Positions 2,534-53,326 of a stretch of DNA of 64,000 nucleotides are shown here, in pieces; position 1 is the stretch's first letter; the number at the start of each line of letters is the position of its first letter. Under the pieces are notes generated by a model. The model made no database searches, was not told where the DNA came from, and saw nothing but the letters and a program-made list of their open reading frames with translations. The position numbers were made by a program, and so were the translations under genes. Location: positions 1 to 64,000 of IMG/VR virus record IMGVR_UViG_3300046517_002304. The stretch is one strand, 5' to 3'.

Positions 2534-2588
2534 ATGATACTCCTAATGAAACGATAGAATAATATATCTAAGGTTGAATAAATATTAT

Positions 2589-3251
2589 ATGACAAACAAG
2601 TATTTAGTTATAATAATCATATTATTATTGGCCGTAATCATATTTAGACACAGCAGAACCACCATTGAAGTTGGCGTTCATCAGCCTAATACAAGCGAAA
2701 AAGTAAACCTAGATCCAGCAGTGCCGAAAGAAGACGTCGTAACCGAACCGACTCCAGCAGAAACTCCCAACACAGAAGTCAAAACAGACAGTCCCCCTAT
2801 GGTAATTGCTCCGGTGCCGGTGCCTGCCCCAATCCCAGTGCCCGACACAGTACCCCCACCAAAGAGTAACGATGTGGTTTTTGTGTATAGCATGACCGAT
2901 GCTATTAAAAAATCTAAAGAATTAAACAAAAAAATATTAGTATTCTTTCACGCTCCATGGTGCGGAGCATGCGAAACAATGAAAGACTATTTTCCAGGCT
3001 CTAAGCATCCTAATAAAGATGTAAAGACCGCCATGTTAGATTACGTTGTCTTTATGTGTAATACTGACGTTGACAGGGCAATGGCTAAAAAATATGGAAT
3101 TTACGGACTCCCAACCTATATTATCATTGATGAAAATGAAAATATCATCAAAAGCGGTGTCGGAGGACTACCAGCAAGACAATTTATTAGCTGGCTAAAC
3201 ATATCTAAATCAACAAAACCTAAAGCCAGATTTAATAACTCAAGACGATAG
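2589..3251 (+). CDS. Membrane-anchored thioredoxin-family protein
   Basis: N-terminal TM helix, Pro-rich linker, WCGAC active site, cis-Pro loop GLPT. Confidence 0.85.
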   Translation: MTNKYLVIIIILLLAVIIFRHSRTTIEVGVHQPNTSEKVNLDPAVPKEDVVTEPTPAETPNTEVKTDSPPMVIAPVPVPAPIPVPDTVPPPKSNDVVFVYSMTDAIKKSKELNKKILVFFHAPWCGACETMKDYFPGSKHPNKDVKTAMLDYVVFMCNTDVDRAMAKKYGIYGLPTYIIIDENENIIKSGVGGLPARQFISWLNISKSTKPKARFNNSRR

Positions 3252-3261
3252 AAAGAACAAA

Positions 3262-3630
3262 ATGACGAACATATTAGAAAAAGAAACACAAGCTGTAATT
3301 GCTGAATGGAATGCCATAAAGCCAACCGTTGCCGCTGGAGCCAAGGCGGCGTGGAAGTCAGTATCGGGATTTATGCTTAACGCCTTAGATGTGTTCGTTA
3401 TTGCAGTAGAACCTATGATACTGGCTGGCGGCGATAAAAAAGTTGCTGTTTTAACCGCTATTTCGTTAACATATGACTCTGTTGTTGCGCCTTTAATGCC
3501 TTTTTATCTAAAACCATTTAACTCCGCTATCAAGGCATTTATCATAATGACATTAGCGTCTTCTATGATTGATTTCGTAGTAAAGCAATATAATAAAATG
3601 GGTGGCGTACCTATGCAAGCTGCGAGCTAA
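3262..3630 (+). CDS. Small hydrophobic/membrane protein (holin-like size)
   Basis: 122 aa with several hydrophobic segments; function not recognised. Confidence 0.5.
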   Translation: MTNILEKETQAVIAEWNAIKPTVAAGAKAAWKSVSGFMLNALDVFVIAVEPMILAGGDKKVAVLTAISLTYDSVVAPLMPFYLKPFNSAIKAFIIMTLASSMIDFVVKQYNKMGGVPMQAAS

Positions 3631-3634
3631 TTTA

Positions 3635-4108
3635 ATGTTTAAAACATGGCTAGAAACAGTGCAATTAGAAAAACCTTTTGTATTTCTTGATCTTGATGAA
3701 ACACTAATTCACTGTTTGGATTATCCAGATGCAGAATCTATTATAGCAAGGCCGCATTTAGAGCAATTTTTAAAATCGGCCAACAAATTCGCTAACTTAT
3801 GTATTCTAACAAGAAGTCCCAAAAAATATGCAGATGCCATCATGCATAACTTAGGGCTATCTGAGTACTTTGCCCACATATTCAGTAGCAGGGACGATAA
3901 TGATATATGTAAAAAATTAAACTTAGACAAACAAAAATGGGTATTGGTGGACAATCGCTATGCCGATTTTCCCTACACCATTGAGAAGATGGGCCAACTT
4001 GGAAACAACGGCGAGTTGATCAAAATCAAATCATGGATAGGCGATAAAAATGATAATAGATTAATGAAAATTATACCCAAAATCAAAAAAACATTAAATA
4101 TCACATAA
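3635..4108 (+). CDS. NIF/FCP1-like HAD phosphatase
   Basis: LDLDETLIH, RPHLEQFL and LVDN motifs; N-terminus MFKTWLE. Confidence 0.8.
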   Translation: MFKTWLETVQLEKPFVFLDLDETLIHCLDYPDAESIIARPHLEQFLKSANKFANLCILTRSPKKYADAIMHNLGLSEYFAHIFSSRDDNDICKKLNLDKQKWVLVDNRYADFPYTIEKMGQLGNNGELIKIKSWIGDKNDNRLMKIIPKIKKTLNIT

Positions 4109-4142
4109 GATAACTTTCCGAGCCAGAAATAATAAATATAAT

Positions 4143-5084
4143 ATGGCAAAGAAAAAATACAAAAAAAATACATGCTTCCTACCAAAGTTCACCGTAGAAC
4201 CAGTGGTTAGTATGCTAGAAGCATCCCAACGCGCAGGATGGCAAATTACTAAATTTGACTTCCCTGACGTTTGGAAATATACAAGAGGCAAAGGTGTGGT
4301 CGTCGCCGTTATTGATAGCGGCTGCGATATGGATCATGAAGATTTAAAAGACAACCTTATCCCAGGCCCTAACTTCGTTATCCCTACATCCTTGCCAGAA
4401 GATGACTGTGGCCACGGTACGCATTGCGCCAGTTTGATCGCGGCCGAGAATAATGAAGTAGGTTTGATCGGACAATCCCCAGAAGCCAAAGTAATGGTAA
4501 TTAAAACATTGGACAGAAACGGGATAGGAAATTTACAGACTGTAGCCAAGGCTATCAGGTGGGCGGTAGACAGTAAGGCCGATATAATTTCTATGTCACT
4601 AGGATGTCCTAATGAAACTCCAGAAATATATAAAGCCGTAATGTATGCCTATAGCCAGAACGTACCTATATTCTGCGCATCTGGAAACTCTGGAAACCTA
4701 AACAATATATTCTGGCCCGCAAATTATAAAGAAACAATAAGCGTATCTGCTTATGATGAAAATATGCACAGAGCGCATTTTGCCAACGTATCTCCAAATA
4801 TTAACTTCTTTGCGCCAGGGACATCGTTATTCGGAGCATATCTAAATAATGATTATACGATTATGTCTGGAACAAGCATGGCCTGCCCGATAATGGCATC
4901 TGCCGCTGCTCTGATATTATCATATAAGAGAAACTATCAAACAGATATTAAATTAAATTCTGTTGAGGACTACCGAGATATTCTAAAACAATACTGCAAG
5001 CCTATTAGCGATAACTGCTCTCAGGGATTTGGGTTCTTTAATCCAGATGTATTTTTAGAGTGGATTAAGAAACAGCCGGTCTAA
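4143..5084 (+). CDS. Subtilisin-family S8 protease
   Basis: VAVIDSG, GHGTHCA and SGTSMACP catalytic motifs; no signal peptide. Confidence 0.92.
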   Translation: MAKKKYKKNTCFLPKFTVEPVVSMLEASQRAGWQITKFDFPDVWKYTRGKGVVVAVIDSGCDMDHEDLKDNLIPGPNFVIPTSLPEDDCGHGTHCASLIAAENNEVGLIGQSPEAKVMVIKTLDRNGIGNLQTVAKAIRWAVDSKADIISMSLGCPNETPEIYKAVMYAYSQNVPIFCASGNSGNLNNIFWPANYKETISVSAYDENMHRAHFANVSPNINFFAPGTSLFGAYLNNDYTIMSGTSMACPIMASAAALILSYKRNYQTDIKLNSVEDYRDILKQYCKPISDNCSQGFGFFNPDVFLEWIKKQPV

Positions 5085-5266
5085 TCACCTAATTTTGTTT
5101 TAGGATCAATTTTATCAATTTCTATTTTGTTCGCAAATTTTTTAGGCGAACAATACTTTTGAATATCCTCTTCAGTCAAACGGCCATGACGATCTGGCGT
5201 AAGAAATTTCTGCCAGTCATGTGGTCGCCACAACTTCAAATTTTTTATGTACTGTTCTGATGCCAT
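5081..5266 (-). CDS. Hypothetical protein
   Basis: 61 aa ORF, TAATG-coupled to upstream gene. Confidence 0.55.
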   Translation of the reverse strand: MASEQYIKNLKLWRPHDWQKFLTPDRHGRLTEEDIQKYCSPKKFANKIEIDKIDPKTKLGD

Positions 5267-5772
5267 TAGTCTATTTTTACTTTCTTTGCAATCAATTCTT
5301 CCTTTAATTTTTTAAACTCGGCAACCTTTTTTTTAGTCCGCTCCTTATCATACCAAGCCTCATATAAAGACATGATTTCTTTAAAGATTTCTTTTTCTTT
5401 GCTAATGGCGGCTATTCTCTTATTATGAGCAGACAATTCCTGCTTATATTTAACATTAACCTTTGGCTGATTACACTTGAGCATAATAGAGCAACAATCA
5501 TCTTCGGGATACTCTACTGCAACAGCGTAACTTAAGATATCTTTACACTCACAGTTTTCATGAATATACTTTGAGATATCATTCATGGATATCTCATTTC
5601 CTACATAAAATGTATGAATATATCGGTAATTATTAAACACTTCAACTGGCGGAAGTGGCTGGCCCCATGGAATACTTAAATACGGAGATTTATCTGGACG
5701 AAAATTAATATACGAATATCGTTTGCGTAATTTTTCAGGCACATAAGAAGGAAATTTAATTTTATCAAACAT
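5266..5772 (-). CDS. Hypothetical protein, paralog of 5789..6271
   Basis: MFDKIKFPSYVPEKLRKRYSYINF vs MFKKFDVSNLPEHLKKDYKFINF; shared EKxIF and C-terminal FxKLKxxLxAK. Confidence 0.7.
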   Translation of the reverse strand: MFDKIKFPSYVPEKLRKRYSYINFRPDKSPYLSIPWGQPLPPVEVFNNYRYIHTFYVGNEISMNDISKYIHENCECKDILSYAVAVEYPEDDCCSIMLKCNQPKVNVKYKQELSAHNKRIAAISKEKEIFKEIMSLYEAWYDKERTKKKVAEFKKLKEELIAKKVKID

Positions 5773-5788
5773 TTTTACTCTCCACCAA

Positions 5789-8129: not shown

Positions 8130-8134
8130 TATTT

Positions 8135-8935
8135 TTACGGAAACACGGTGCCTTGGATTTGTAAAGTGGCCGAATCAGACGGCAGGGCCGCAGATCCCGC
8201 AGGTGTGACTCTTTTTAGCCAAAGAGGAAATCCTTCTTCGGCCCTCAATGTTGCTATTGTAATAGATCCGCTGGTAAATACAACCCCAGTTGGGGTAGTT
8301 GCGACATTTCCAGTGCTCTGAGCAATATCATTTCTTGGACCACCTTCTGTTATCGTGCTCATAGTTGGATTGGGTACAGATGGGGTCAAAGCATTCGTAT
8401 CTACCACCAAAAGATTTTGATTTCTATTGCCGTCATCACCGGTAAATGTTATTGTGTAATTAGAGCCACTTGAATGAGCACAAGAAACCTGTGACAAACC
8501 AGCGGTTCCATTCAACCCAGCCTGCAAATTTACGGCAAAAACTGACGGCGTATTGTCCCAGTTGATCTGGGGAGATAAAGCGTTTTCGTATTTTAGCACT
8601 AAATTTCCACCTGTTGGCGACCCATTTATCGCAATTCGCTGAACCTCATTTCTTGCTAAAACTCCAATAGTAATAGTAGAACCGCCAGCAATCTGGGATT
8701 GCAAAGAAACAGAAACATTGTAGAATACATCCGTTGAATTGTTATTAAATACGTAAATACAGCGATAGTCAGTATACCCGCTTTGAGCCTGTGCGGCAGT
8801 CACATTAGTGAACAAGTTATTCAGCGTTGTTCCGACTGCATGCGAACTAGGTTGCCCACCAAAAGAAAGAGCCGGATTAGTATTGCTTGAACCCCCTGAA
8901 AGCACTATGCTAATATCCGAAGCCATAATCGTCAT
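8135..8935 (-). CDS. Probable virion structural protein
   Basis: S/T/G/N-rich beta-type composition, NNLFxNVT..DYRCIYVFN and FPLWLKR; TAAATA box upstream. Confidence 0.6.
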   Translation of the reverse strand: MTIMASDISIVLSGGSSNTNPALSFGGQPSSHAVGTTLNNLFTNVTAAQAQSGYTDYRCIYVFNNNSTDVFYNVSVSLQSQIAGGSTITIGVLARNEVQRIAINGSPTGGNLVLKYENALSPQINWDNTPSVFAVNLQAGLNGTAGLSQVSCAHSSGSNYTITFTGDDGNRNQNLLVVDTNALTPSVPNPTMSTITEGGPRNDIAQSTGNVATTPTGVVFTSGSITIATLRAEEGFPLWLKRVTPAGSAALPSDSATLQIQGTVFP

Positions 8936-8961
8936 ACCTTATTTACCCTGAGAGGTTGAAA

Positions 8962-11494: not shown

Positions 11495-12244
11495 CTACTT
11501 ACTAAGATCAACAATCTTAAAACCTAGATTAAGCAAGTCAGCAAATCCATCTAAGGATTTCTTTGCCTGCATATCACCTAGAGTATCATTAATCTCATCA
11601 ATAGTAGCTTCTGTTAGTTGTTTTCCTGGGTTATAACCCTTGCTCAAATAAGACGCAAAGCTATAAAGAGCAGACTCAGTCCCACGATAAAACTTAAGAG
11701 CATCGTCTACCATCTTTTCTCTTGAGTAGCTTTCCGATACAACATACTTTGAGCACTTGGAGCACATCCCGTCTTTGGGGTCTTTACTGCCGCAATTACA
11801 GAAATAAGTGTCCATACCGTTGCCAAAATAATTGGCTTCTTCTTTTTTATCATGGCCATGCGCAGCGTGACTACCTTTACCTTCGCATTTGTCGCAATCA
11901 CAATTACACTTTGACTTTCCACCTTTATCCATCATGTCATCATCATCATCGTCCATGTCGTCGTCATCCATATCATCATCTTCGTCACCATCTACATCAT
12001 CATCGTCCATGTCGTCGTCGTCCATGTCATCATCTTCGTCACCATCTACATCATCATCGTCCATGTCTTCGGGTTCTGGGGCAATAGGTTGCTTAGGCGC
12101 TTCTGTAGTAACATCTTCAGTGGCGTCAACATTTGCCCATTGAGCACCGATTACGCCAATGGCCTTTGGTCCAGAAGAAAGTCCAAGTAAAGTAGAAGAT
12201 CCAAGACTTTCATGTAAAAGCTTCCAAGATTTAAAATCTATCAT
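11495..12244 (-). CDS. Highly acidic, Cys-cluster protein with capsid-targeting-like N-terminus
   Basis: MIDFKSWKLLHES start, poly-Asp tract, CNCDCDKC and CNC..CSKC. Confidence 0.7.
   Translation of the reverse strand: MIDFKSWKLLHESLGSSTLLGLSSGPKAIGVIGAQWANVDATEDVTTEAPKQPIAPEPEDMDDDDVDGDEDDDMDDDDMDDDDVDGDEDDDMDDDDMDDDDDDMMDKGGKSKCNCDCDKCEGKGSHAAHGHDKKEEANYFGNGMDTYFCNCGSKDPKDGMCSKCSKYVVSESYSREKMVDDALKFYRGTESALYSFASYLSKGYNPGKQLTEATIDEINDTLGDMQAKKSLDGFADLLNLGFKIVDLSK
11947..12067. repeat. 54-bp coding tandem repeat (about 2.2 copies)
   Basis: 11947-12000 and 12001-12054 differ at 2 positions; encodes the D/E/M-rich tract. Confidence 0.85.
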
Positions 12245-12292
12245 ATTATATTTTTCCTGCGATATAGGTGCTGAAATATATATCAAAGACAA

Positions 12293-18974: not shown

Positions 18975-20027
18975 TTAGAACTTACAGCTTTCGTCGTAAA
19001 GTGCCCATGAAAGTTCCTTGGGAGTCAAGTGCTCTTCGGGTCTAATTTCATGTCCGGCTTCCTTGAATCTCCTGAGGATATTTTGCAATTCTTTACTCGC
19101 AATCAGCCGCGAAGGGTCGTTAGACATAAACTTCATCATTCTGGCCAAAAACCAATCTCTAGTCTGTTGAAGCCCCTTTGAGAGTTCGTATGCCTTAGGA
19201 TTATCTGAAAATCCCAAAAATCTCATGGTATCTTCAGGATCAAGCCAGCACAAGTGGCTCCAAGGATCGCCAGGCTTATATTCTGGATTAATAGGTTGAG
19301 CAAGCGCTCTATCAATAAAATGTAGTAAGAATCTTATCCAGTTCTTAATTAAATATGCGTCCTTGCAGCCATCACCCTCAATTACCCGAAACTCAACAGT
19401 CCGGCGGGCGCTATCCTTCTTTAAGGACTTGGCATTCATCGTATAATATTTAACATCGCCTACACGATTGATGATTTCCTGAGGAGAATACTTTTCATCG
19501 TGCGATAAATTATTCGTCATGCCTATAACTTGGCAATAACGATTAACCTTTCGGTAATCTGGCACTGCGTCCAAAATAACAGGTTCGCACTTTATATACC
19601 ACGATAAAACTCTGGCAATCTGTTCATTTTCTAAATCAGAAAAATCAATATGAACATGAACAGAACAACGCTTGTCTGACTTTATCTTTGCGTCTTTAGA
19701 AAGTGCCTCAATAACACGGCACACTTTCTGAACGCCCTTCCATCCACTGAACGGAGGCGTGCAAACCTCCATACCGCAACTACTGTCTGGTTTAACAATC
19801 CATGTATTATTGTTATTAGTATGTTCCCAACCACGTACTTCGGCACCTTCTTCACTATTGGCATTCACAACTGACGCCACGTAATCAATGCCGGCAACCT
19901 TACTATTACCATCATCTGGTTTATTTTTACCATCAAAAGCGTTCAGCTCTATTTCAATACCGAATTTTCTGGTGGAAACAAACGCCACATGTTCGTGTCC
20001 CATTTCCTTCTTCCTGGTATCGCCCAT
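18975..20027 (-). CDS. Amidoligase_2 family COOH-NH2 ligase
   Basis: FGIEIE, PDSS.GMEVCTPP, CSVHVH, TVEFR. Confidence 0.85.
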   Translation of the reverse strand: MGDTRKKEMGHEHVAFVSTRKFGIEIELNAFDGKNKPDDGNSKVAGIDYVASVVNANSEEGAEVRGWEHTNNNNTWIVKPDSSCGMEVCTPPFSGWKGVQKVCRVIEALSKDAKIKSDKRCSVHVHIDFSDLENEQIARVLSWYIKCEPVILDAVPDYRKVNRYCQVIGMTNNLSHDEKYSPQEIINRVGDVKYYTMNAKSLKKDSARRTVEFRVIEGDGCKDAYLIKNWIRFLLHFIDRALAQPINPEYKPGDPWSHLCWLDPEDTMRFLGFSDNPKAYELSKGLQQTRDWFLARMMKFMSNDPSRLIASKELQNILRRFKEAGHEIRPEEHLTPKELSWALYDESCKF

Positions 20028-20069: not shown

Positions 20070-20098
20070 AATATACTTCATTTGCATCAATGTGTCAA
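20070..20098 (-). promoter_or_regulatory. Sigma70-type promoter for the amidoligase
   Basis: TTGACA-N17-TATATT on the minus strand. Confidence 0.75.
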
Positions 20099-26480: not shown

Positions 26481-27071
26481 TTATTTAGTAATAATACCGA
26501 CACCATACCGAGTATTAAATTTTTCAAAATTTCTATTTCTAACCTTACAAAATACATTAAATATTTCTGGATTAACGTCAATGTAATCTACTACAAATAT
26601 AACATCATAATTTAGTACATCCCAAGCAAAATTCAAGTATTCGCTCATTTTTTCCTTATCTTTTTCTCTTATAAAAACAATTTGCGGCCGTTGATCTTTG
26701 ACTAATTTCTTGAACCCTTCATCTAATTGCCCATAATAAAAGTAAAATTTGTCCTTGTAAACACGTCTTATGTTATGCCTAGTCATGTTATCTGGGTAAT
26801 AATCATTTGTCTTATTTTGAAATGCTGTAAAACTCTTGACACTGGGACATCCGCACAAAAAACTACCACTACATATTCCTAGTCCTAATCCAAACTCTAC
26901 ACAGCTACTCGGGGTAATATCCTGTCCTAAGTAGTAATAAAACGGCAAGTACATCGGATCAGAAAGCTCTGAACTTTTATAATCATTTTCGCTATTAAGG
27001 CTAAATTTATTCAACAATACACTTGCAATATTATTTTTTTTAAGTTTTTGGCGGATTTTTTCACAGTCCAT
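26481..27071 (-). CDS. Methyltransf_24-like protein, degenerate
   Basis: YYYLGQ..PSSCVEFGLGLG resembles 30768..31367 but lacks the IDGxH motif. Confidence 0.55.
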   Translation of the reverse strand: MDCEKIRQKLKKNNIASVLLNKFSLNSENDYKSSELSDPMYLPFYYYLGQDITPSSCVEFGLGLGICSGSFLCGCPSVKSFTAFQNKTNDYYPDNMTRHNIRRVYKDKFYFYYGQLDEGFKKLVKDQRPQIVFIREKDKEKMSEYLNFAWDVLNYDVIFVVDYIDVNPEIFNVFCKVRNRNFEKFNTRYGVGIITK

Positions 27072-27104
27072 AAATTTATCATAGCGAAAGCAGCTAAATA
27101 TTGC

Positions 27105-27830
27105 ATGATAGAATGCATCCAAGTGTGTGTGAATTACGGAGATTTCTTAGCCTGGACCCTGCCGTTTAACCGAATGCAGTTTGATAATATGGTAATTGTC
27201 ACATCGGTAGAAGATACCTTAACTCAAAAAATTTGCGAATACTGGCATGTTCGTTGTATAAAAGTAAGAATCAATAAAGATGAAGGTTTCCCAAAAGGAA
27301 AACTAATCAATATCGGGTTAGAAAACCTAAAACAAACTGATTGGGTTGTTCATATGGATGCGGACATCTACCTACCCCCGCACTTCAAGCGAACTATGGA
27401 AACCATTACATTAGACAAAGATGCAATCTATCATATGGATAGAATGAATTGTAGTAATTTTGCCGACTGGATTCGCTTTCTACAAAAACCATTAGTGCAA
27501 CATGAAAATGATATTTTTGTTCACTCTGGCCCATTTCCTACCGCGACTAGAGTGGCCAGCCTAAGCCGCGACGGAATTATAGCTATTGGATTTTTTCAAT
27601 GTTTTCATCAAGGTACTAAAAACCTTAAGTATAATGAAGAACATACAAGCGCAGCAAGAGGCGACATGCTATTCGGCATGAAGTTTCCAAGAGACAAAAG
27701 GCAATTCTTACCAGAATGTATTGCTATTCATCTTGAAACTAAAATAAAAGAAGGCGAACCACATGGACAAAACTGGGATGGACGCAAGACTCCACCATTC
27801 ACTATAGATGGACCGTCCAATGCAAAATAA
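27105..27830 (+). CDS. GT-A/GT2-like glycosyltransferase
   Basis: KGKLINIGL, WVVHMDADIYL (DxD), GFFQCF. Confidence 0.75.
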   Translation: MIECIQVCVNYGDFLAWTLPFNRMQFDNMVIVTSVEDTLTQKICEYWHVRCIKVRINKDEGFPKGKLINIGLENLKQTDWVVHMDADIYLPPHFKRTMETITLDKDAIYHMDRMNCSNFADWIRFLQKPLVQHENDIFVHSGPFPTATRVASLSRDGIIAIGFFQCFHQGTKNLKYNEEHTSAARGDMLFGMKFPRDKRQFLPECIAIHLETKIKEGEPHGQNWDGRKTPPFTIDGPSNAK

Positions 27831-30016: not shown

Positions 30017-30730
30017 TTACCTACAATGCAAAAACATATTGTGTTTTAGCTCAAAATTATGCTCACATTTTTGTCCATTTAGATAAACTTCATATCCGTT
30101 AGAATACAAAATGTCTAACAGCTCCTGCGGATCAAAGCCGTGATACTCCATACTGACCTTTTCAAAAAGATGTGTTTCAATTTCCAGCTTCGGCTTCTTC
30201 TTAAGCATCTCTTTAGCTCCACGCAATACGGCTATTTCATATCCCTCAACGTCAATTTTAATAACATCTGGTGCAATCCCCAAATCATCTAAAGCTATAG
30301 TTTCTACTTCGGTTCCACGGCTATCAACCATTTCTTCAGATATAAACTTCTTCATCCCGCTTTTTTCATCTGCTATATTACTGTATATCTGATAATCTAT
30401 AACGTCATTTAGCTGAAAATTACGCTTTATAATAGGAATATTGCTTGGATTAGCTTCAATAACTATAATTTTAGACTTAGACCGCATTACCATGCTTAGG
30501 GCAACGCTTCCTATGTTGGCGCCTACATCTATAACAACATCGCCAGGAGAAATCAAATCTCTTAAAAAAAGGTTTCTTTTATTCTGAACTTCAACAGCAT
30601 CATCCCAAGAACATTTTAAATCATCGCAAATAGTTTTTAGACCATACCAGTTTTCATCACGATCATTGGATATGCAAAGCTTAAACCAATTATCCCAAAC
30701 TTTATGATGCTCAATATACGGGTATACCAT
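30017..30730 (-). CDS. FkbM-family methyltransferase
   Basis: IDVGANIG, IEAN, IKIDVEGYE.AVLRGA. Confidence 0.9.
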   Translation of the reverse strand: MVYPYIEHHKVWDNWFKLCISNDRDENWYGLKTICDDLKCSWDDAVEVQNKRNLFLRDLISPGDVVIDVGANIGSVALSMVMRSKSKIIVIEANPSNIPIIKRNFQLNDVIDYQIYSNIADEKSGMKKFISEEMVDSRGTEVETIALDDLGIAPDVIKIDVEGYEIAVLRGAKEMLKKKPKLEIETHLFEKVSMEYHGFDPQELLDILYSNGYEVYLNGQKCEHNFELKHNMFLHCR

Positions 30731-30767
30731 ATGTTATTTACTATCAAGAACTAATCTAAATATAGCA

Positions 30768-31367
30768 ATGGTAGCCGAAATACAAAAATTAATAGAATCC
30801 TGTGCCAAAACAGAAGATGATATTCTTTCTTTGGTTAAAAATCCAATAGACGATGGCGTGGACTGGCTTGGAAAGGGAACTTACATAGCATACTATGCCA
30901 TAGGGCAATATTTAAGACCAAAAAGCATAGTAGAAATAGGGGTAAGATATGGATATTCCCTAGAATCAATGAGGCGAGGAAGTGGTGAAACCAAACACAT
31001 TTTCTGCTTTGACAACGAGCAAGATTGCCTAGGATCTGGCGAATACGTATTCAATAAATTAAAAGACGTAGAACTTGAGACTTTAGATGTAATCAACGCA
31101 AACACACAAGCGATCAATTCATTAAACATCAATATGAAAATAGACTTAGGGCATATTGACGGATGTCATACCTTTGACGGAGTCTATCACGATTGCATAC
31201 TTGTTTCAAAGGTTATGAAAAGAAACGGGGTTATCTTAGTAGATGATGTTCTACATGGCAAAGATAGCGATGAAGTGAGATGGGGCGTAGATAAATTTTG
31301 CTGGGAGCGCGATATTAAACCAATGGTAATTGAGTGCCATAGAGGGCTATACGTAATTCAACTTTAG
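30768..31367 (+). CDS. Methyltransf_24 family methyltransferase
   Basis: VEIGVRYGYS, HIDGCH, VDDV. Confidence 0.85.
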   Translation: MVAEIQKLIESCAKTEDDILSLVKNPIDDGVDWLGKGTYIAYYAIGQYLRPKSIVEIGVRYGYSLESMRRGSGETKHIFCFDNEQDCLGSGEYVFNKLKDVELETLDVINANTQAINSLNINMKIDLGHIDGCHTFDGVYHDCILVSKVMKRNGVILVDDVLHGKDSDEVRWGVDKFCWERDIKPMVIECHRGLYVIQL

Positions 31368-36914: not shown

Positions 36915-37378
36915 TATATCACGAAATCCTTAACTAATTTAATAAAATCTCTATTAGCCAACTTTGCTCTGGGGGCAGTAAGTATTCCGCTGCACTCATT
37001 AACTTGCGTAATCCCGCTGCAATTAAAGTATATGGAGCCAGTACAACAATCTGCATTCCATGGATCAGAATGAACAACTTCACCGTGCCATACAACATTA
37101 TTAAACTTATTAGAAATTACATTAGCCCATTTGATTCCATCGTCACTAAACCATATGTCTATTATGAATTCTGAAGGAGCACTATACTCAGTGGGAATAG
37201 CTCTCAAATCTTCAGAATAGCAGCCTGATACCCATCGGCTAAATGGGAGGCAGTTCCAGAAACCAGAACTAATGTAAAACTTATTATAGCTATCTTCTAA
37301 TTTAGCTGGTGGATTCCATAAAACCAAATCAGAATCTCTTACTACAAACCTGGTTTGCATTATATCACGAAATCCTTA
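36908..37378. repeat. 25-bp exact direct repeats flanking one ORF
   Basis: TTTGCATTATATCACGAAATCCTTA at 36908-36932 and 37354-37378. Confidence 0.92.
36914..37360 (-). CDS. Hypothetical Trp/Cys-rich protein inside the repeat-bounded cassette
   Basis: 148 aa; ends KDFVI like the upstream gene. Confidence 0.65.
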   Translation of the reverse strand: MQTRFVVRDSDLVLWNPPAKLEDSYNKFYISSGFWNCLPFSRWVSGCYSEDLRAIPTEYSAPSEFIIDIWFSDDGIKWANVISNKFNNVVWHGEVVHSDPWNADCCTGSIYFNCSGITQVNECSGILTAPRAKLANRDFIKLVKDFVI

Positions 37379-37902
37379 TCGCTAAGAGAAACTAATCCAA
37401 TCCTAATTCCACTATCCTTGGTCACTTTTTTACCAATATGCTTAGTGGCATTCCAAATAATTGACTTAATATAAATTTCAAATTTCCTGTTAACCAATAG
37501 TTTAGCGCTTACATCTGGAAAAAGCTCTTTGGGAACATATCTATTAAGAATTAAATCAAGCATATTCTCTTGATGATCCCCAAAGGTACGCTTGTTCGCA
37601 CCATGGTGTCTACGATTTTCCCAAAGCCGCTCTAGTTCGCAAACTATACAAAAAATAAACTTATCCTTACAATATGCCTTAGCAATTTCTAATGAATCCT
37701 CAATATATGTCTGCCGCTTAAAATAAACAGCAGCCTTAGTTAAGGCCATTTTTGTTTCTTGAATTACGTCTTCAATTTCTAAGAAACTTCCGCTGTTGTA
37801 ATTGCGTCTTAATAGCTTCCAAGAAGCATCATAACAAAGACGACCATACTTCTTATCTAATAACGCATACTCATCATTAGTTATCGCAAACTTATTCTTC
37901 AT
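37360..37902 (-). CDS. Sigma70 region-2-like protein (possible phage sigma factor)
   Basis: KYGRLCY..EDVIQETKMALTKA...KFEIYIKSIIWN; no region 4 visible. Confidence 0.45.
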   Translation of the reverse strand: MKNKFAITNDEYALLDKKYGRLCYDASWKLLRRNYNSGSFLEIEDVIQETKMALTKAAVYFKRQTYIEDSLEIAKAYCKDKFIFCIVCELERLWENRRHHGANKRTFGDHQENMLDLILNRYVPKELFPDVSAKLLVNRKFEIYIKSIIWNATKHIGKKVTKDSGIRIGLVSLSDKDFVI

Positions 37903-41500: not shown

Positions 41501-41679
41501 TACTTACAAATACATGGATTACAACTGCAACCCATTCCCTTGCAACAAGCGGTTGGCATGCCTGGTTTGCACCCGCAATTTTTGGTGCAAGAGCACTGAG
41601 ATGTATTAACAACCCCAAATAAACGGTACCCACCGGCGATGGCCAGTAAAATTGCTGTTACAAATATAAAGTTTTTCAT
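41500..41679 (-). CDS. Exported metallothionein-like Cys-rich peptide (59 aa)
   Basis: Manual translation MKNFIFVTAILLAIAGGYRLFGVVNTSQCSCTKNCGCKPGMPTACCKGMGCSCNPCICK; AGGAG SD and TAAATA upstream; TAATG-coupled to the next gene. Confidence 0.8.
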   Translation of the reverse strand: MKNFIFVTAILLAIAGGYRLFGVVNTSQCSCTKNCGCKPGMPTACCKGMGCSCNPCICK

Positions 41680-41707
41680 AATTTTTCTCCTATAGTATTT
41701 AGTTTTT

Positions 41708-42637
41708 TTAGTAGGAATCTAGTAAATGCATGATAATATGAGCCATTTTCTTTACATGCATGGATGGTGATAGATGTACGTCCCACGAAACAATATCTGG
41801 AACCCATCTATGGACTCTAATCGGCGATGAGATTTCTTGTCCGATACACTTAACTAAACCTGTTTTAGGATTGAAGCTCATGTCAATATTGAATTGCTCC
41901 AGTCGTTCGCCATCAACAGGTCTCATCATGCCGCCGCCGCGAACACTAAAGTAAGTAATGTATCTGTTGTTATTTATTCTTTTAGTTTTCTCATAGATAA
42001 ACCATTCTGGCTTCTCATTTTGAACCCAACTGTCTATCATCTTCACCAAAGGCAGTAGATCGTATTCTTTTTCAGGGTTTAATGGTTTTTCTTTTACTAA
42101 ATGCTCCATATTTTCCCATATTACATCTATAATTTTATTCTCTACATCTGGATCTTCTGATTTTGGCTTAAACTGTATTAATGGTATAGCAGATATACAC
42201 TGCCAAACTAACTCGCCCTCAAAATTATGGCTTAAAACCGATACAAATGCCTTCCAAGAACCGAGTGGGCTTAAGTCTAGTTCTATTGCGCCTTCATTGT
42301 ACTCGCCATGAGCAATATCTTTATTGCTATTTTTATTTTTGTGACCCCATATAATGCTATCACTCCATATCTCTATTGGTTTTAGCGCACCTAACTTTCG
42401 CTTAGACAAAGTATCAATAATTACACCCGCTTCTGCGGGTTGAATAGCATGGTTGTTTTTAGATATTGGTTGGAGTTTACTAAGTTTTCCAAAGCCGAAA
42501 ATATCTTTGTGCTTCCCGAAGTATTCTTCTGGCTCTGCTCTTTTGGGAAGTTTTTGAAGATTTGGGTCTATAACAGGCCGTTCTTTGGATTTAAATCCAA
42601 ACATGTCTTCTTGCATCCAGTTAGCGAAACTTCCCAT
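41708..42637 (-). CDS. Hypothetical protein with capsid-targeting-like N-terminus
   Basis: MGSFANWMQED; TAAATA-N4-ATG. Confidence 0.7.
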   Translation of the reverse strand: MGSFANWMQEDMFGFKSKERPVIDPNLQKLPKRAEPEEYFGKHKDIFGFGKLSKLQPISKNNHAIQPAEAGVIIDTLSKRKLGALKPIEIWSDSIIWGHKNKNSNKDIAHGEYNEGAIELDLSPLGSWKAFVSVLSHNFEGELVWQCISAIPLIQFKPKSEDPDVENKIIDVIWENMEHLVKEKPLNPEKEYDLLPLVKMIDSWVQNEKPEWFIYEKTKRINNNRYITYFSVRGGGMMRPVDGERLEQFNIDMSFNPKTGLVKCIGQEISSPIRVHRWVPDIVSWDVHLSPSMHVKKMAHIIMHLLDSY

Positions 42638-42660
42638 ACCTTATTTAGTTGAATTTAAAA

Positions 42661-43191
42661 TTAAAACTGCTCATTAGTACCCTTCACAAAATTATAAAAA
42701 TCAGCTAGTTCATCATTTGACCTAGGAAGATACTTATTTTGAGAACGGTCAAAATCCTGCGCAGCCTTTCGTCCGTACACCTTTATTACTCTTGCTTTAG
42801 ATGGGTCGTTAACAAAAAATTCGTTACCGAAACCCCGGCTAGATTGGAAATATTGATTTCTTGGAACTTGAGTCATGTCAATTAAGGCTACGTATTGCCT
42901 ATTTCCATAGCTTGACCAGTTAGCCAGATGAGATGTGATCATAAATTTACCAACGTCTACCCCTCCTGTAGCCAAGCTAGACATATCTCTAGGGCCTTTG
43001 TTTGGGTCTATCTGAAAATTAGGATCATCTGTCCAATGCCAATACAAACCATGCTTAATTTGTATTTGATAATCTTGATAAAAATCTTTTAAAGATGGAG
43101 CCTTTATGGCTTCAGCGGCAAGTCCACGAAGAATGGCGGTTTTTAGGTTCCACTTGCGAGATTCTTCTAGGAATAGCTTAAATGAACTCAT
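42661..43191 (-). CDS. Possible ADP-ribosyltransferase-fold protein with capsid-targeting-like N-terminus
   Basis: LYWHWT..FMITS..NEFFV spacing resembles the H-Y/S-E ART core; starts MSSFKLFLEE. Confidence 0.45.
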   Translation of the reverse strand: MSSFKLFLEESRKWNLKTAILRGLAAEAIKAPSLKDFYQDYQIQIKHGLYWHWTDDPNFQIDPNKGPRDMSSLATGGVDVGKFMITSHLANWSSYGNRQYVALIDMTQVPRNQYFQSSRGFGNEFFVNDPSKARVIKVYGRKAAQDFDRSQNKYLPRSNDELADFYNFVKGTNEQF

Positions 43192-43208
43192 GCAATATAT
43201 ATTGTATG
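43189..43208. promoter_or_regulatory. Bidirectional TATATA box with ATG 4 nt away on each strand
   Basis: CAT-gcaa-TATATA-ttgt-ATG. Confidence 0.7.
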
Positions 43209-44695: not shown

Positions 44696-44901
44696 TTATG
44701 CTTCTTTCTTCGCTTTCGCTTTTTTTCATGGCTAGTATAATAACCACCCCATGACCATACTGGCATTGCCATAGGCAGTCCAAATCCCCCACCGGCACCA
44801 CCATTTGATCCGGCTCCGCACATACCTCCTGTGCCGCCAGCTCCCGCCATCCCACCGCCACAACCACATTGTTCCATACGCCATTGTTCAAATGTTTTCA
44901 T
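44692..44901 (-). CDS. Small Gly-rich protein with basic tail and capsid-targeting-like N-terminus
   Basis: MKTFEQWRME..GGG..KKRKRRKKHK; TAAATA-N4-ATG. Confidence 0.7.
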   Translation of the reverse strand: MKTFEQWRMEQCGCGGGMAGAGGTGGMCGAGSNGGAGGGFGLPMAMPVWSWGGYYTSHEKKRKRRKKHK

Positions 44902-44943
44902 GCTATATTTACTATTTTTTACGCAAACATTTAATATGAATTT

Positions 44944-47844: not shown

Positions 47845-47869
47845 GGCAGTTGGACTGCATAGTTTTAAT

Positions 47870-49734: not shown

Positions 49735-49756
49735 GTTTTCCTGACTATAGTAGGTT

Positions 49757-50269: not shown

Positions 50270-50271
50270 TC

Positions 50272-51270
50272 TTATGTTGTGAAGACTTCACATGATTTCA
50301 TTTGACTTTCGTTTAGTCCAATAAGACTTTGGTCACATAAACGACATAAGTAAATACCTTCTGACGCCCTTAGCTCAACAACCTTAAAGAAATCTTCATG
50401 ATTAAGTGATCTTCCTTGTAGTTGTTCACGAAGACAAAAATTCTTTCTTACTCTCCATATAGCAGATCTTTTATTATTAGTATGCTTAGATATTTTTTTA
50501 ATTTCACATTGATCAGATATGCTAGAAGCGTTTAGCTTGTCTATTTGGATAGAAAACTTTGCGTTTTCATAAAGTTCGCAGCTATTATTTATTTGATAGG
50601 CAGTAGCTTCTTTTGACTCTCCGAGGAGATTTGTTGTTTTATGATAATAATGTGACTTACCAGTTACTTTAAATATTTCTCCAGGCTCAAACTTAAACGT
50701 GTACAAAACAAATGGCTTAGATACAATATACTCAGTACCGACGATTATATTTGGCTCTGTGCTCTTCCAGGGGTTGTGTGATATGTCATAATAATCCTGC
50801 CACTCTTCGTTTTCGTAATTTTCGTATTTATCGATTGCCTTATCTACTGCTTTATTGTCCCATAATTTGAATAATGAAAAGTTATTCTGTAGGCTTTCTA
50901 GCGTCACTCCACAGAATAACTTATCGGATATGGTGCAGGTGATATTAAAAACACCTGCACCAACCTTAGTTATAATAAATATCTTATGGCTTCGCTCTTC
51001 TCCCTTGTCATGATAAAGTATCGTATCACATAAGTAATTTGATACATGCACCTTACCATCAGTGCTTGCGGTAATCGGAACGAAGTGGTCGCAGGATTTT
51101 TTTAATGTAGATTCTAATAATACTGGATTAGATTTAGAGTCGTCCGATCTTTTTAAGACACAGTATTCAGGAGGATGATTAACTGCTGTTATTATGTAAT
51201 AACCATTACCACTAAGGCCAGGCGTGATACAGCTTTTTTTAGCCCGAACTATGTCACCTGGTAGAAACAT
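50272..51270 (-). CDS. Hypothetical protein with repeated KOW/SH3-like segments
   Basis: FLPGDIVRAK and FEPGEIFKVTG. Confidence 0.55.
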   Translation of the reverse strand: MFLPGDIVRAKKSCITPGLSGNGYYIITAVNHPPEYCVLKRSDDSKSNPVLLESTLKKSCDHFVPITASTDGKVHVSNYLCDTILYHDKGEERSHKIFIITKVGAGVFNITCTISDKLFCGVTLESLQNNFSLFKLWDNKAVDKAIDKYENYENEEWQDYYDISHNPWKSTEPNIIVGTEYIVSKPFVLYTFKFEPGEIFKVTGKSHYYHKTTNLLGESKEATAYQINNSCELYENAKFSIQIDKLNASSISDQCEIKKISKHTNNKRSAIWRVRKNFCLREQLQGRSLNHEDFFKVVELRASEGIYLCRLCDQSLIGLNESQMKSCEVFTT

Positions 51271-51311
51271 TTAGAATGACGCATTCTTTTCTAGAGAATG
51301 GAGCAGCTATT

Positions 51312-51671
51312 TTAGAGAGTAAAGATTGACTTACCAGTGTTCTCGTCAATCTGCCAGTGAATATTAAATGTATTTTCTAAATCGGCAGCTACGTTAGCTC
51401 TTGCGCTACGCAGAGCAGCAACAACGTATAGAGCACTTGGATTCTCTTGATTTTTATACTCGCCTATTGTTTGCGTAATATTTTTAATCATTCTGATTAA
51501 TTGACGCGGGTCAACGGCGAACTTTTTCCCGCACACCTTCAGTTCCTTCTTGCGATCAAGGCTGATGGGAAAGTTATTTTTCTTGACGAGAATCTCGGTA
51601 TTCCCATCTTCTTTTTTTGCGGGCACTGAGATTGTCGTTTTGTCTGGTAAGAATCTATTAATTAGACTCAT
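51312..51671 (-). CDS. Hypothetical protein
   Basis: MSLINRF start after AGGAG, directly downstream of the GATase. Confidence 0.6.
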   Translation of the reverse strand: MSLINRFLPDKTTISVPAKKEDGNTEILVKKNNFPISLDRKKELKVCGKKFAVDPRQLIRMIKNITQTIGEYKNQENPSALYVVAALRSARANVAADLENTFNIHWQIDENTGKSIFTL

Positions 51672-51672
51672 T

Positions 51673-52947
51673 TTAGTTCTCCTGCACTTTAGATTCAAGG
51701 TTCACTAGGTCACCATAAACGTCCTGCAACGTGTCAATCACAAGACTACAATTTTCTTCATATTTGTCTTCTTCATCGTTTTGAGCAAGAATGGTCACGA
51801 TGCTATCTGCTGCTTCAAGTTTATTTTCTATGCTCTGAATGCTCTCAACAAGAGATTCCTTGTTTATATTCGCAAGGGTATCATCACCAGTGGACACTTC
51901 TAAAGTAGTGTCTTCATCAGGGTCGTTCTGTTGGTCAATCATATCTTGTGAATTTATCAAATGCTCGTCAACCAGCACCTCTGATGTCTTGTCCTGCTTA
52001 ATAATGGACAACGGTGTCTTTGTCGTTTTTTCTGTATCATTAATAACGGTTGTGGGAGCCTTCCCAGTTTTTTTCTCTTTCTTTTGTTTTGACTTACCCG
52101 CCGGAGTAGTTGACTGGACCTTCTTAATCTGGAACCTCTCATAAGTTGGCAAGTCACTAGTACCCGCCAACTTTAAGACCCATGTCTGGAAATCAGGGAA
52201 TATAATAACGCTTTCAGGAATACACTTTCGCGCTTCTTCGCTTACGTCCTGTGACGTTTGCTCCCAGATTTTATCTGTTGAACAGAAAAAGAATTGCCCG
52301 AGAGTTTCAGTAGCATCAATCACATGAATAGGACGGGTATTTCCATCACGGAACAACCAGAGATACCGGTCGCCGTTAGTCATGTATTCACCAACTGCAA
52401 CTGCCATCGCACCATAATGAACGTTGGCAAAGATGTCTTCAATGCCAGTGATTCTGTCAAGGATATGTTTTTCGGTATCTGTGGCGAAATTATACGCCGC
52501 TTTTTCAGAGGAATGCTCAAACATTCGCAGCAATATTTCGCTGTCGCATCCAGAATCCGTTTCATACTCTTGTTTCAGATTTTCATACTCAGCAATTTTG
52601 CCGTTGTGAACCAGTGCTATGGTCTGATCATCGGATACGTGTGGATGATTATTTTTATTAACTTTTTCATCACCCATCTTCGTTGGCTGGCGACAGTGGG
52701 CGATCATAAGGGATGGATTCATATCCTTTGTGTTTTTCCACACATTGGTTTTAATATAATCAGTTGCCTTGATAGGCTTTTTATCCCAAGAGATTTTACC
52801 CTTGGTTTCGCCGTCATCTTTTTGGCAGCACCAAAAGCCAGTGGCGTCTAGGCCACGAGATTCGGTTCGGACAAGAAGGGCAGACATAATCTCATAGGTG
52901 ATTTTGGGATTCTTGCTGACCCCTATGTATCCTGCGATTCCGCACAT
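51673..52947 (-). CDS. Class II (Ntn) glutamine amidotransferase with acidic C-terminal extension
   Basis: MCGIAG, RGLDATG, HCR, NNHPH, LVHNG, DSE. Confidence 0.88.
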   Translation of the reverse strand: MCGIAGYIGVSKNPKITYEIMSALLVRTESRGLDATGFWCCQKDDGETKGKISWDKKPIKATDYIKTNVWKNTKDMNPSLMIAHCRQPTKMGDEKVNKNNHPHVSDDQTIALVHNGKIAEYENLKQEYETDSGCDSEILLRMFEHSSEKAAYNFATDTEKHILDRITGIEDIFANVHYGAMAVAVGEYMTNGDRYLWLFRDGNTRPIHVIDATETLGQFFFCSTDKIWEQTSQDVSEEARKCIPESVIIFPDFQTWVLKLAGTSDLPTYERFQIKKVQSTTPAGKSKQKKEKKTGKAPTTVINDTEKTTKTPLSIIKQDKTSEVLVDEHLINSQDMIDQQNDPDEDTTLEVSTGDDTLANINKESLVESIQSIENKLEAADSIVTILAQNDEEDKYEENCSLVIDTLQDVYGDLVNLESKVQEN

Positions 52948-52964
52948 GTCGTTTCTCTCTTCGT

Positions 52965-53309
52965 TTACAGGGAATTCGTTTGAATTGTGTCTTTGCCGGC
53001 TAGATTATGCATTGTTTCAGCAGTTTGGTCAATAGCACCTTTCAAATCTTCGCTGGTATCGATAGATTTTAGTATAAAAACGGCAACCTTTTGAAGCTCT
53101 TTAAGCGTGCTGGTATCAGAATCGTCCCAATCGTCGTTTAATATTTTACGAATCTCATTGGCGATATTTGTAGCTGTTTTGATAATCTGCCTACTGCCCA
53201 TTTGAGCAGCATCATTTTGCAAAGAATCTATCGCATTTACGATTGGACCGATACGGTCGTTTAAGATTTTCTTTTGTTCGTTCAAGACGAACTTTTTGAA
53301 GCGTGTCAT
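52965..53309 (-). CDS. Helical protein with capsid-targeting-like N-terminus
   Basis: MTRFKKFVLNE; TATATA-N4-ATG. Confidence 0.7.
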   Translation of the reverse strand: MTRFKKFVLNEQKKILNDRIGPIVNAIDSLQNDAAQMGSRQIIKTATNIANEIRKILNDDWDDSDTSTLKELQKVAVFILKSIDTSEDLKGAIDQTAETMHNLAGKDTIQTNSL

Positions 53310-53326
53310 ACGATATATATGGTAGC

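What the first reader, a model, noticed from the sequence alone, without database searches (positions are those of the whole stretch)
2579..53319. TA[A/T]ATA exactly 4 nt upstream of ATG at ten genes: a leaderless late-expression programme
Seen: TAAATA-N4-ATG at starts 2589(+), 4143(+), 8935(-), 27105(+), 30730(-), 42637(-) and 44901(-); TATATA-N4-ATG at 43191(-), 43206(+) and 53309(-); N5 spacing at 30768(+). Leadered variants (TANATA, then SD) occur at 2533, 12244, 41679 and 63682. Known: T4 late promoters are a lone -10 box (TATAAATA) with the start a few nt downstream. Inference: fixed spacing puts transcription start at or next to the AUG, giving leaderless mRNAs. Probable early genes (20027, 20176, 57044) instead have sigma70 -35/-10 boxes and longer leaders. 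The motif also corrects several ORF-track starts.
Basis: partly seen in the sequence, partly recalled or inferred. Interest (0 to 1): 0.75.

Follow-up and report, generated by a model that had tools for sequence, protein, structure and literature searches.

The report
Promoter boxes fused to start codons
In this 511-kb soil phage about 45 genes, several of them virion genes, carry a T4-late-promoter-like box (TAAATA or TATATA) exactly 4 bases before their ATG; this most likely makes messenger RNAs that begin at the start codon, a layout absent from T4 itself, but no RNA 5' ends were available to prove it.

Summary
All 11 sites exist. In the window TAWATA-N4-ATG occurs 16 times against 4.2 expected. 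In the whole 511-kb phage genome it opens 46 ORFs, against about 4 at any other spacing.

The box is strict: one-mismatch variants are not enriched. It has no -35 partner and no Shine-Dalgarno (0/41). It is followed by a pyrimidine at -1 and the A of ATG in 98% of cases, against 51% in other genes.

It marks heads of transcription units:
- 59% of these genes sit at divergent junctions, against 15% of SD-led genes.
- One palindromic TATATA serves two back-to-back genes, twice.
- A terminator hairpin abuts the box.

The phage encodes a gp55-like late sigma with no region 4, and no RNA polymerase of its own was found. Box-led genes include tail tube, sheath stabiliser and head closure. A 595-kb relative shows the same signal; T4 and a T4-like cyanophage keep the box 20-29 nt upstream.

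Best reading: a T4-type late promoter moved up against the ATG, giving leaderless late mRNAs. The start site is inferred, not observed.

A second, more abundant box, TAGTTATCC-N10-ATG, marks the early-looking region. The closest precedents are the leaderless middle/late mRNAs of Thermus phages.

The parts
2579..2591 (+). TAAATA-N4-ATG heading a thioredoxin-like gene (2589-3251)
   Evidence: divergent junction
4133..4145 (+). TAAATA-N4-ATG heading a subtilase S8 gene (4143-5084)
8933..8945 (-). TAAATA-N4-ATG heading a 266-aa gene (8135-8935); divergent junction with a 26-nt gap
27095..27107 (+). TAAATA-N4-ATG heading a weakly GT2-like gene (27105-27830); divergent junction with a 33-nt gap; moves the start from the TTG at 27048
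30728..30740 (-). TAAATA-N4-ATG heading an FkbM-type methyltransferase gene (30017-30730)
30757..30770 (+). TAAATA-N5-ATG heading a Methyltransf_24 gene (30768-31367), divergent partner of 30730; reads tagc|a ATG, so a one-base leader is predicted
42635..42647 (-). TAAATA-N4-ATG heading a 309-aa gene (41708-42637)
43189..43208 (.). One palindromic TATATA (43196-43201) serving two back-to-back genes: CAT-N4-TATATA-N4-ATG, with starts at 43191(-) and 43206(+)
   Evidence: the same architecture at 87726/87741, kept in a 79% relative
44899..44911 (-). TAAATA-N4-ATG heading a 69-aa ORF (start at 44901)
53307..53319 (-). TATATA-N4-ATG heading a 114-aa gene (52965-53309); divergent junction with a 17-nt gap
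41679..41701 (-). Candidate leadered form: cTAAATActaT|AGGAG...ATG, where the predicted start falls on the SD
   Evidence: single case, not statistically supported
12242..12282 (-). Candidate leadered form: TATATA-N32-ATG with an AGGAAA Shine-Dalgarno
   Evidence: single case

Best explanation
The window is the first 64 kb of a complete 511-kb T4-related huge phage from soil. The hexamer TA(A/T)ATA is the -10-like element of a promoter class that has no -35 element. It is most probably read by host RNA polymerase carrying the phage's gp55-like late sigma factor. The box sits 4 bases before the ATG, and those bases end in purine-pyrimidine. Transcription is therefore predicted to start on the A of the ATG, or 1-5 bases before it in the N5-N9 variants. 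The resulting mRNA has no leader and no Shine-Dalgarno and would be translated from its 5'-terminal AUG. Shown here: the motif, its spacing, its strictness, its placement at heads of transcription units, the sigma gene, the kinds of genes it heads, and its conservation. Inferred: the start site, the sigma that reads the box, the late timing, and leaderless translation.
For: Spacing and strictness:
- 46 ORF-opening ATGs at N4 against about 4 at other spacings; 16 against 4.2 expected in the window.
- One-mismatch variants are not enriched.

Promoter-like anatomy:
- Nothing is conserved from -45 to -12; -11 is rarely T; -2 is a purine in 38/46; -1 is a pyrimidine in 44/46.
- -1 is a pyrimidine in 98% of called class-1 genes against 51% of other genes.
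- The Y|R step stays at the N4 boundary when the ATG lies 1-5 nt further on.
- No SD in 0/41 box-led genes, against 38% of other genes.
- ATG 46, GTG 2, TTG 1 at N4, while about 15% of SD-led starts are non-ATG.

Heads of transcription units:
- 59% have a divergent upstream neighbour against 15% of SD-led genes (odds ratio 8.1, p=6e-9). Median divergent gap is 30 nt against 81 nt.
- One TATATA palindrome serves both genes at 43191/43206 and at 87726/87741. A relative with 79% aa identity keeps it while the spacers changed.
- A terminator hairpin lies directly upstream of the box at 490997, and a hairpin with a T-run at 428380. The same is seen in IMG/VR relatives.

Machinery:
- A gp55-like sigma of 156 aa matches phrog_234 at 1e-10, has Sigma70 region 2 only, and is 31% identical to T4 gp55 over 78 aa.
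- No beta' domain and no T7-type RNA polymerase were found.

Late character:
- Targets include tail tube, sheath stabiliser, head closure and a virion structural protein.
- The box is absent from 250.7-428.4 kb, the early-looking block of small same-strand genes.

Relatives and controls:
- LR756511.1 (595 kb) has N4=21 and N5=27 against 1-4 background, with pyrimidine at -1 in 21/21 N4 cases.
- T4 and cyanophage S-IOM18 have TAAATA 20-29 nt upstream of the ATG and at most 1 case at N4.
- The first 45 nt of class-1 ORFs fold slightly less (-3.75 against -4.75 kcal/mol, p=0.03).

Literature: the T4 late promoter is a lone -10-like box read by gp55 (PMC2988020, PMC7892883). A -10 box adjacent to the ORF is the recognised signature of leaderless genes (PMC12340547).
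Against: - No 5' ends: the only RNA run held four short pieces of a relative's capsid gene.
- Geometry is one base tighter than in T4. By the base positions reported in PMC7892883, the box ends at -6 there and at -5 here. In sigma-70 terms a 4-nt discriminator is unusually short.
- TAAATA is not enriched in sense orientation elsewhere in intergenic DNA (19 against 13). If this is the general late promoter, most SD-led late genes, including the major capsid gene, must lie in operons behind it or use something else.
- No gp45-type clamp was found and gp33 was not searched for by profile; the 88-aa ORF next to the sigma matches nothing.
- Orthologues in the 595-kb relative often have an SD instead of the box.
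- The box sits where an SD would sit, and in the relative its spacing spreads from N4 to N8.
- The host is unknown, so its ability to translate leaderless mRNA is untested.
Confidence: 0.68

Rival explanations
1. The hexamer acts in the RNA, not the DNA. It would be an AU-rich, non-Shine-Dalgarno ribosome-binding or enhancer element, for example a site for protein S1 or a phage factor, placed where an SD normally sits, on mRNAs that start further upstream.
For: It occupies -10 to -5, the usual SD position, and excludes an SD. In LR756511.1 the spacing spreads over N4-N8, as SD spacing does. Orthologues swap the box for an SD. The phage carries its own IF3. No RNA data exclude upstream starts.
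Against: A ribosome site should be spread evenly through operons, yet the box is eight times enriched at divergent junctions whose gaps have a median of 30 nt. One palindrome serves both strands. A terminator hairpin abuts the box. Pyrimidine at -1 followed by a purine is a start-site signature and stays at the N4 boundary when the ATG moves. The hexamer tolerates no mismatch, unlike AU-rich enhancers. It resembles the T4 late box, and a gp55 homologue is present.
Confidence: 0.12
2. The box is a promoter that gives leaderless mRNA, but it is read by the host's primary sigma factor, perhaps remodelled by a phage protein as in Thermus phages P23-45 and phiYS40. The gp55-like protein would not be involved, and the genes need not be late.
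For: TAAATA and TATATA are also near matches to a sigma-70 -10 hexamer. Thermus phage middle/late genes are leaderless (PMC3594737). No gp45 was found and no gp33 candidate is known. Many box-led genes in the window are enzymes rather than virion parts.
Against: The last base of the hexamer is A, not the near-invariant T of sigma-70 boxes, and 4 nt to +1 is shorter than sigma-70 usually allows. No TG extension is conserved at -12/-13. The core equals the last six bases of the T4 late box TATAAATA. A region-2-only gp55 homologue is encoded. The box is excluded from the early-looking block.
Confidence: 0.15
3. Chance or composition: an AT-rich genome throws up AT-rich hexamers near ATGs, and ORF calling picks them out.
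For: The genome is 37% G+C. About 4 of the 16 matches in the window are expected by chance, and at least two of them are not genuine gene starts.
Against: There is a tenfold excess at one spacing only. Other AT-rich hexamers show no such spike. No shuffle of 100 reached the observed count. The signal recurs in a 42% G+C relative and is absent from 35% G+C T4.
Confidence: 0.01

Closest known systems
Bacteriophage T4 late promoters (TATAAATA, read by gp55 with gp33 and the gp45 clamp)
   Same: A lone, strictly conserved AT-rich -10-like box with no -35. The core TAAATA equals the last six bases of the T4 box. A gp55-family sigma with region 2 only is encoded. Virion genes are among the targets. 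The phage is T4-related: gp20 portal and gp23 capsid.
   Different: In T4 and in a T4-like cyanophage the box lies 20-29 nt before the ATG and the mRNA has an SD leader; here it lies 4 nt before the ATG with no SD. The first two bases of the T4 octamer are not conserved here. TATATA is accepted as well as TAAATA. The distance to the predicted +1 is one base shorter. No gp45 was found, and gp33 was not identified.
Leaderless middle/late mRNAs of Thermus phages phiYS40 and P23-45
   Same: A phage temporal class whose promoters lack a -35 and whose transcripts start at the start codon. phiYS40 infection shifts the IF2/IF3 balance in favour of leaderless translation (PMC3594737). This phage has its own IF3 gene.
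   Different: From my own knowledge of the Thermus phage literature, not checked here, those promoters are extended -10 boxes read by host sigma-A remodelled by small phage proteins. Here there is no TG extension, and a phage sigma of the gp55 family is the likely reader. The host is unknown and not a known leaderless-rich lineage. Most of this phage's other genes use SD.
The '-10 region adjacent to ORF' pattern of Deinococcus-Thermus and Actinobacteria (TANNNT a few bp before the start codon)
   Same: A -10 box at a fixed short distance from the start codon, without an SD, that also corrects gene starts (PMC12340547, PMC4633059).
   Different: That is a cellular, housekeeping-sigma habit with a looser TANNNT box; from my own knowledge its spacer is also longer and GTG starts are common. 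Here the hexamer is exact, the spacer is 4 nt and the start is ATG only, in a phage.

Membership tests
T4-type late transcription (gp55 / gp33 / gp45 on TATAAATA) | Lone -10-like AT-rich box with no conserved -35 | tested here: met
   In the logo of 46 sites nothing is conserved from -45 to -12 and TAWATA is invariant at -10..-5.
T4-type late transcription (gp55 / gp33 / gp45 on TATAAATA) | Full octamer TATAAATA | tested here: not met
   Only the last six bases are kept. -11 is A24/C10/G9/T3 and -12 is unconserved. TATAAATA itself does not occur in sense orientation in same-strand intergenic DNA.
T4-type late transcription (gp55 / gp33 / gp45 on TATAAATA) | Phage-encoded gp55-family sigma (region 2 only) | tested here: met
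   ORF at G000 95290-95760(+): phrog_234 at 1e-10, Pfam Sigma70_r2 only, 31% identity to T4 gp55 over 78 aa.
T4-type late transcription (gp55 / gp33 / gp45 on TATAAATA) | gp45 sliding clamp and gp33 co-activator | tested here: inconclusive
   No hit for phrog_223, PF02916 or the T4 gp45 sequence. Clamp-loader-like AAA+ genes are present. gp33 was not searched for by profile. The 88-aa ORF next to the sigma matches nothing.
T4-type late transcription (gp55 / gp33 / gp45 on TATAAATA) | Heads late (virion) genes | tested here: met
   Tail tube, sheath stabiliser, head closure and a virion structural protein carry the box. However, the capsid and portal genes have SD leaders.
T4-type late transcription (gp55 / gp33 / gp45 on TATAAATA) | Start site about 6 nt after the box, on an SD-bearing leader | tested here: not met
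   The box is 4 nt from the ATG with no SD. T4 and S-IOM18 have it at N20-N29. The start site itself could not be tested.
Leaderless genes (-10 box adjacent to the ORF) | -10-like box at a fixed short distance from the start codon | tested here: met
   Spike at N4.
Leaderless genes (-10 box adjacent to the ORF) | No Shine-Dalgarno | tested here: met
   0/41 against 38% of other genes.
Leaderless genes (-10 box adjacent to the ORF) | Primary 5' end on the start codon | not testable with these tools
   Only one RNA run was found, with four short pieces of a relative's capsid gene.
Leaderless genes (-10 box adjacent to the ORF) | 5'-terminal AUG preferred | tested here: met
   ATG 46, GTG 2, TTG 1 at N4; about 15% of SD-led starts are non-ATG.
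Thermus-phage type middle/late promoters | Extended -10 (TG upstream of the hexamer) read by the host primary sigma | tested here: not met
   No TG at -12/-13. Which sigma reads the box cannot be tested here.

The most novel reading that the evidence does not exclude
This huge-phage lineage expresses a large share of its genes, roughly 120 of about 800-1100, from leaderless or near-leaderless mRNAs. It uses two dedicated promoter classes without a -35: TAGTTATCC-N10-ATG in the early-looking block and TAWATA-N4-ATG in the late block. It also retunes start-codon selection with its own IF3, so that host SD-led and phage leaderless messages are treated differently.
Probability: 0.25. Interest if true: 0.8.

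Novelty: new variant of a known kind. Interest (0 to 1): 0.6.

Why it matters
Huge phages are known almost only from metagenomes, and nothing is known about how they are transcribed. If this reading holds, three things follow.

- The best-studied phage promoter, the T4 late box, has in one lineage been pushed up against the start codon. This removes the leader and the ribosome-binding site and makes 15-50-nt bidirectional control regions possible.
- The box is a practical annotation rule. It fixes the true start of about 45-55 genes here, and about 50-80 in a 595-kb relative, and it marks their temporal class.
- Leaderless translation would be a routine route for a phage whose other genes use Shine-Dalgarno. 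That makes the phage's own IF3 gene an obvious candidate for study.

It also gives a small, testable system: one sigma of 156 aa and a 6-bp box.

Tried and rejected
- RNA evidence: both run searches and the single read-laying run were used. Six DNA runs hold the phage. The one metatranscriptome holds only four pieces of 78-259 nt, 90-97% alike, inside the capsid gene. There is no 5'-end information.
- Single-sequence searches with T4 gp55 and gp45 found nothing. The profile phrog_234 then found the sigma. phrog_12791, phrog_223 and PF02916 found nothing.
- A general 'leadered late promoter' class: TAAATA is not enriched in sense orientation in intergenic DNA. Only a small N18 peak was seen.
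- A degenerate version of the box: one-mismatch variants are at background.
- A CCGATAAA motif that caught my eye in intergenic DNA is not enriched, 31 against 20 expected.
- Genome-wide sigma-70-like promoters: 34 against about 21 in shuffles, too weak to define an early class.
- Host inference from the phage IF3: the best matches are 30-42% identical and spread over many phyla.
- Footprinting of the 246193/246244 pair: no relatives in IMG/VR. The tail-tube query found only the same phage.
- Literature: no paper mentions LR756511 or leaderless genes in huge phages. phiKZ and AR9 transcripts are reported as leadered (PMC8244752, PMC5312081).
Full report
**What the sequence is**

The window is the first 64 kb of G000. 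G000 is an IMG/VR virus record of 511,233 bp with direct terminal repeats, 37.4% G+C, rated 100% complete.

It encodes a T4-type portal (gp20, with an intein) and a gp23-type major capsid protein. It is held by soil and rhizosphere metagenomes.

Its nearest deposited relative is the 595-kb 'uncultured phage' LR756511.1, with 42% aa identity in the portal. IMG/VR fragments with about 65% capsid identity come from phages of similar estimated size.

It is therefore a T4-related huge phage of an unknown soil bacterium.

**The observation**

All eleven sites are present as described.

- In the window, TAWATA-N4-ATG occurs 16 times against 4.16 +/- 1.99 in shuffles, and none of 100 shuffles reached 16.
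- Genome-wide, a scan of the spacing from 0 to 12 gives 61 matches at N4 against 10-25 elsewhere. Counting only ATGs that open an ORF of 60 aa or more, N4 gives 46 against 2-9.
- Other AT-rich hexamers show no such spike.
- One-mismatch versions of the hexamer are at background at that offset, 25 against about 23.

So the signal is an exact six-base box at one distance.

**Anatomy**

In the 46 sites nothing is conserved upstream of -11. Position -11 is rarely T. Positions -10 to -5 are TA(A/T)ATA. Position -2 is a purine in 38 of 46, and -1 is T (35) or C (9).

Among called genes, -1 is a pyrimidine in 98% of box-led genes against 51% of all others.

When the ATG lies 5-9 bases from the box instead of 4, the pyrimidine-purine step mostly stays at the N4 boundary. 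Examples are tagc|aATG, tagt|aaATG and tggt|agcATG.

None of 41 box-led genes has an SD-like word, against 38% of the rest.

At N4 the start codon is ATG 46 times, GTG twice and TTG once. SD-led starts in the same genome are about 15% GTG or TTG.

**Why I read it as a promoter acting in DNA**

- Box-led genes sit at the heads of transcription units. 59% have a divergently transcribed upstream neighbour, against 15% of SD-led genes (odds ratio 8.1, p = 6e-9). The median divergent gap is 30 nt against 81 nt, which leaves no room for a separate promoter and leader.
- Twice, one palindromic TATATA lies midway between two back-to-back ATGs 15 nt apart, at 43191/43206 and at 87726/87741. In a relative with 79% protein identity the palindrome is unchanged, while both spacers have changed and one has gained a base.
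- A terminator hairpin stands directly before the box at 490997 and a hairpin with a T-run at 428380. The same is seen in two IMG/VR relatives, where orthologous genes carry TAAATA in one and TATATA in the other, both at N4.
- A pyrimidine at -1 and a purine at +1 is the usual start-site preference of bacterial RNA polymerase (established knowledge).
- A small secondary peak at N18 consists of TAAATA-N4/5-GGAG-N8-ATG. There the SD begins just where the start is predicted.
- The first 45 nt of box-led ORFs are slightly less structured than those of SD-led ORFs (p = 0.03).

**Who reads it, and when**

- The profile of T4 gp55 (phrog_234) finds one ORF of 156 aa at 95.3 kb (E about 1e-10). It has Sigma70 region 2 only and is 31% identical to T4 gp55 over 78 residues.
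- A second sigma, with regions 2 and 4, lies at 457 kb.
- No beta' domain and no T7-type polymerase was found, so the phage presumably uses host core enzyme.
- The T4 late promoter is a lone -10-like box read by gp55 (PMC2988020, PMC7892883). The bases reported as flipped out at -12, -9 and -8 (PMC7892883) place TATAAATA at -13 to -6. The box here equals its last six bases.
- Box-led genes include a tail tube, a sheath stabiliser, a head-closure protein, a virion structural protein and large Laminin_G_3 proteins.
- The box is absent from 250.7-428.4 kb. That block holds small genes (median about 90 aa), 90-98% of them on one strand, and looks like an early region.

**Controls and relatives**

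- In T4 and in the T4-like cyanophage S-IOM18 the same hexamer piles up 20-29 nt before ATGs, with at most one case at N4. Those are the classical leadered late mRNAs.
- In LR756511.1 the hexamer opens ORFs at N4 (21), N5 (27), N6 (11), N7 (8) and N8 (13), against 1-4 elsewhere. A pyrimidine is at -1 in 21/21 N4 and 22/27 N5 cases.
- A 72-kb fragment of another relative gives N4 = 6 and N5 = 4 against 0-2.
- Orthologous genes do not always keep the layout. Of about ten pairs between G000 and LR756511.1, four keep a box near the ATG and five have an SD instead.

**Weak points**

- No transcript 5' end was available.
- The predicted start is the fifth base after the box. In T4 it is the sixth. 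I assume the T-A step selects it, and N5 is the commonest spacing in the relative.
- Outside the N4-N9 and N18 positions the box is not enriched in intergenic DNA.
- The capsid and portal genes have SD leaders. So this is not the only route to late expression.
- No gp45-type clamp was found, and gp33 was not identified.
- The host, and hence its capacity for leaderless translation, is unknown.

**A second class**

The commonest upstream word in the genome is TAGTTATCC.

- GTTATCC occurs 211 times, mostly on the minus strand between 259 and 420 kb.
- It stands exactly 10 nt before an ORF-opening ATG 46 times, 11 nt 6 times and 13 nt 20 times, against 0-5 at other spacings.
- It has no -35, a pyrimidine at -1 in 90% of cases, and ATG only.
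- In the N13 group a C-A step is kept at the N10 position (cATcATG). This argues that the promoter fixes the start independently of the codon.
- This box is not found in the relatives.

The two boxes never share territory.

**What is known**

- Leaderless middle and late mRNAs are reported for Thermus phage phiYS40 (PMC3594737).
- A -10 box next to the ORF is the accepted mark of leaderless genes in Deinococcus-Thermus and mycobacteria (PMC12340547, PMC4633059).
- The jumbo phages phiKZ and AR9 have leadered transcripts (PMC8244752, PMC5312081).
- I found nothing on leaderless genes in T4-related or huge phages.

**Verdict**

It is best filed as a new variant of a known kind.

Noticed in passing
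G000 259-420 kb (outside the window), e.g. 278964(-), 279519(-), 280495(-): A second promoter-like box, (T)TAGTTATCC.T. GTTATCC occurs 211 times. It lies exactly 10 nt before an ORF-opening ATG 46 times (N11: 6; N13: 20) against 0-5 at other spacings. It has no -35, a pyrimidine at -1 and ATG only. It fills the early-looking block that lacks the TAWATA box, and it is absent from the relatives.
   Followed up: partly
G000 260.8-274.6 kb: Ten back-to-back modules GGATAACT-N11-12-AGTTATCC, which are bidirectional pairs of the second box. They lie in a stretch of up to 50% G+C with one box every 230 bp or so.
   Followed up: partly
G000 470401-470655(-); ORF L087:1438-2082(-), 214 aa: The phage encodes a full-length translation initiation factor IF3 homologue (IF3_C 61.5 bits). 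Its best cellular matches are 30-42% identical and spread over many phyla. This is relevant because IF3 discriminates against leaderless mRNA in E. coli.
   Followed up: partly
G000 480493-480633(-): A weak ribosomal protein S21-like match (20 bits, below the Pfam cut-off) in an 83-aa frame.
   Followed up: no
G000 457.4-458.0 kb(-) (L065:1090-1737): A second phage sigma factor of 215 aa with regions 2 and 4 (phrog_351 at 8e-28). Its promoter class is unknown, and neither box found here has a -35.
   Followed up: partly
window 37360-37902(-): A 180-aa ORF with a very weak Sigma70_r2 match in the genome search (E 0.036) and no Pfam or PHROG hit. Probably nothing, but it lies inside the window.
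   Followed up: partly
G000 172935-175430(+): The T4-type portal gene carries an intein (Intein_splicing, residues 130-332). The LR756511.1 portal aligns over 99% of the query, so it probably has one too.
   Followed up: no
G000 153450-153632(-): A short second match to the gp23 capsid family (36 bits) interrupted by TAG and TAA stops. It looks like a capsid-gene fragment 8 kb from the intact gene, next to the box-led gene at 153771.
   Followed up: no
G000 498299(-), 495234(-), 485183(-), 236076(-), 215732(-): A minimal-leader form, TAAATA-N4/5-GGAG-N8-ATG (peak at N18, 8 against about 2). The predicted transcript would begin at or a base before the Shine-Dalgarno.
   Followed up: partly
window 20070-20098(-): A near-consensus sigma-70 promoter, TTGACA-17-TATATT (11/12), about 40 nt before the ATG at 20027. 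It suggests the host polymerase uses classical -35/-10 boxes.
   Followed up: partly
G000 127085-134827(-): A 2580-aa ORF headed by the TAAATA box, with no PHROG match at all.
   Followed up: no
G000 267995-358116: Only four tRNA genes (Met twice, Arg-TCT, Leu-TAA), all on the minus strand inside the early-looking block.
   Followed up: no
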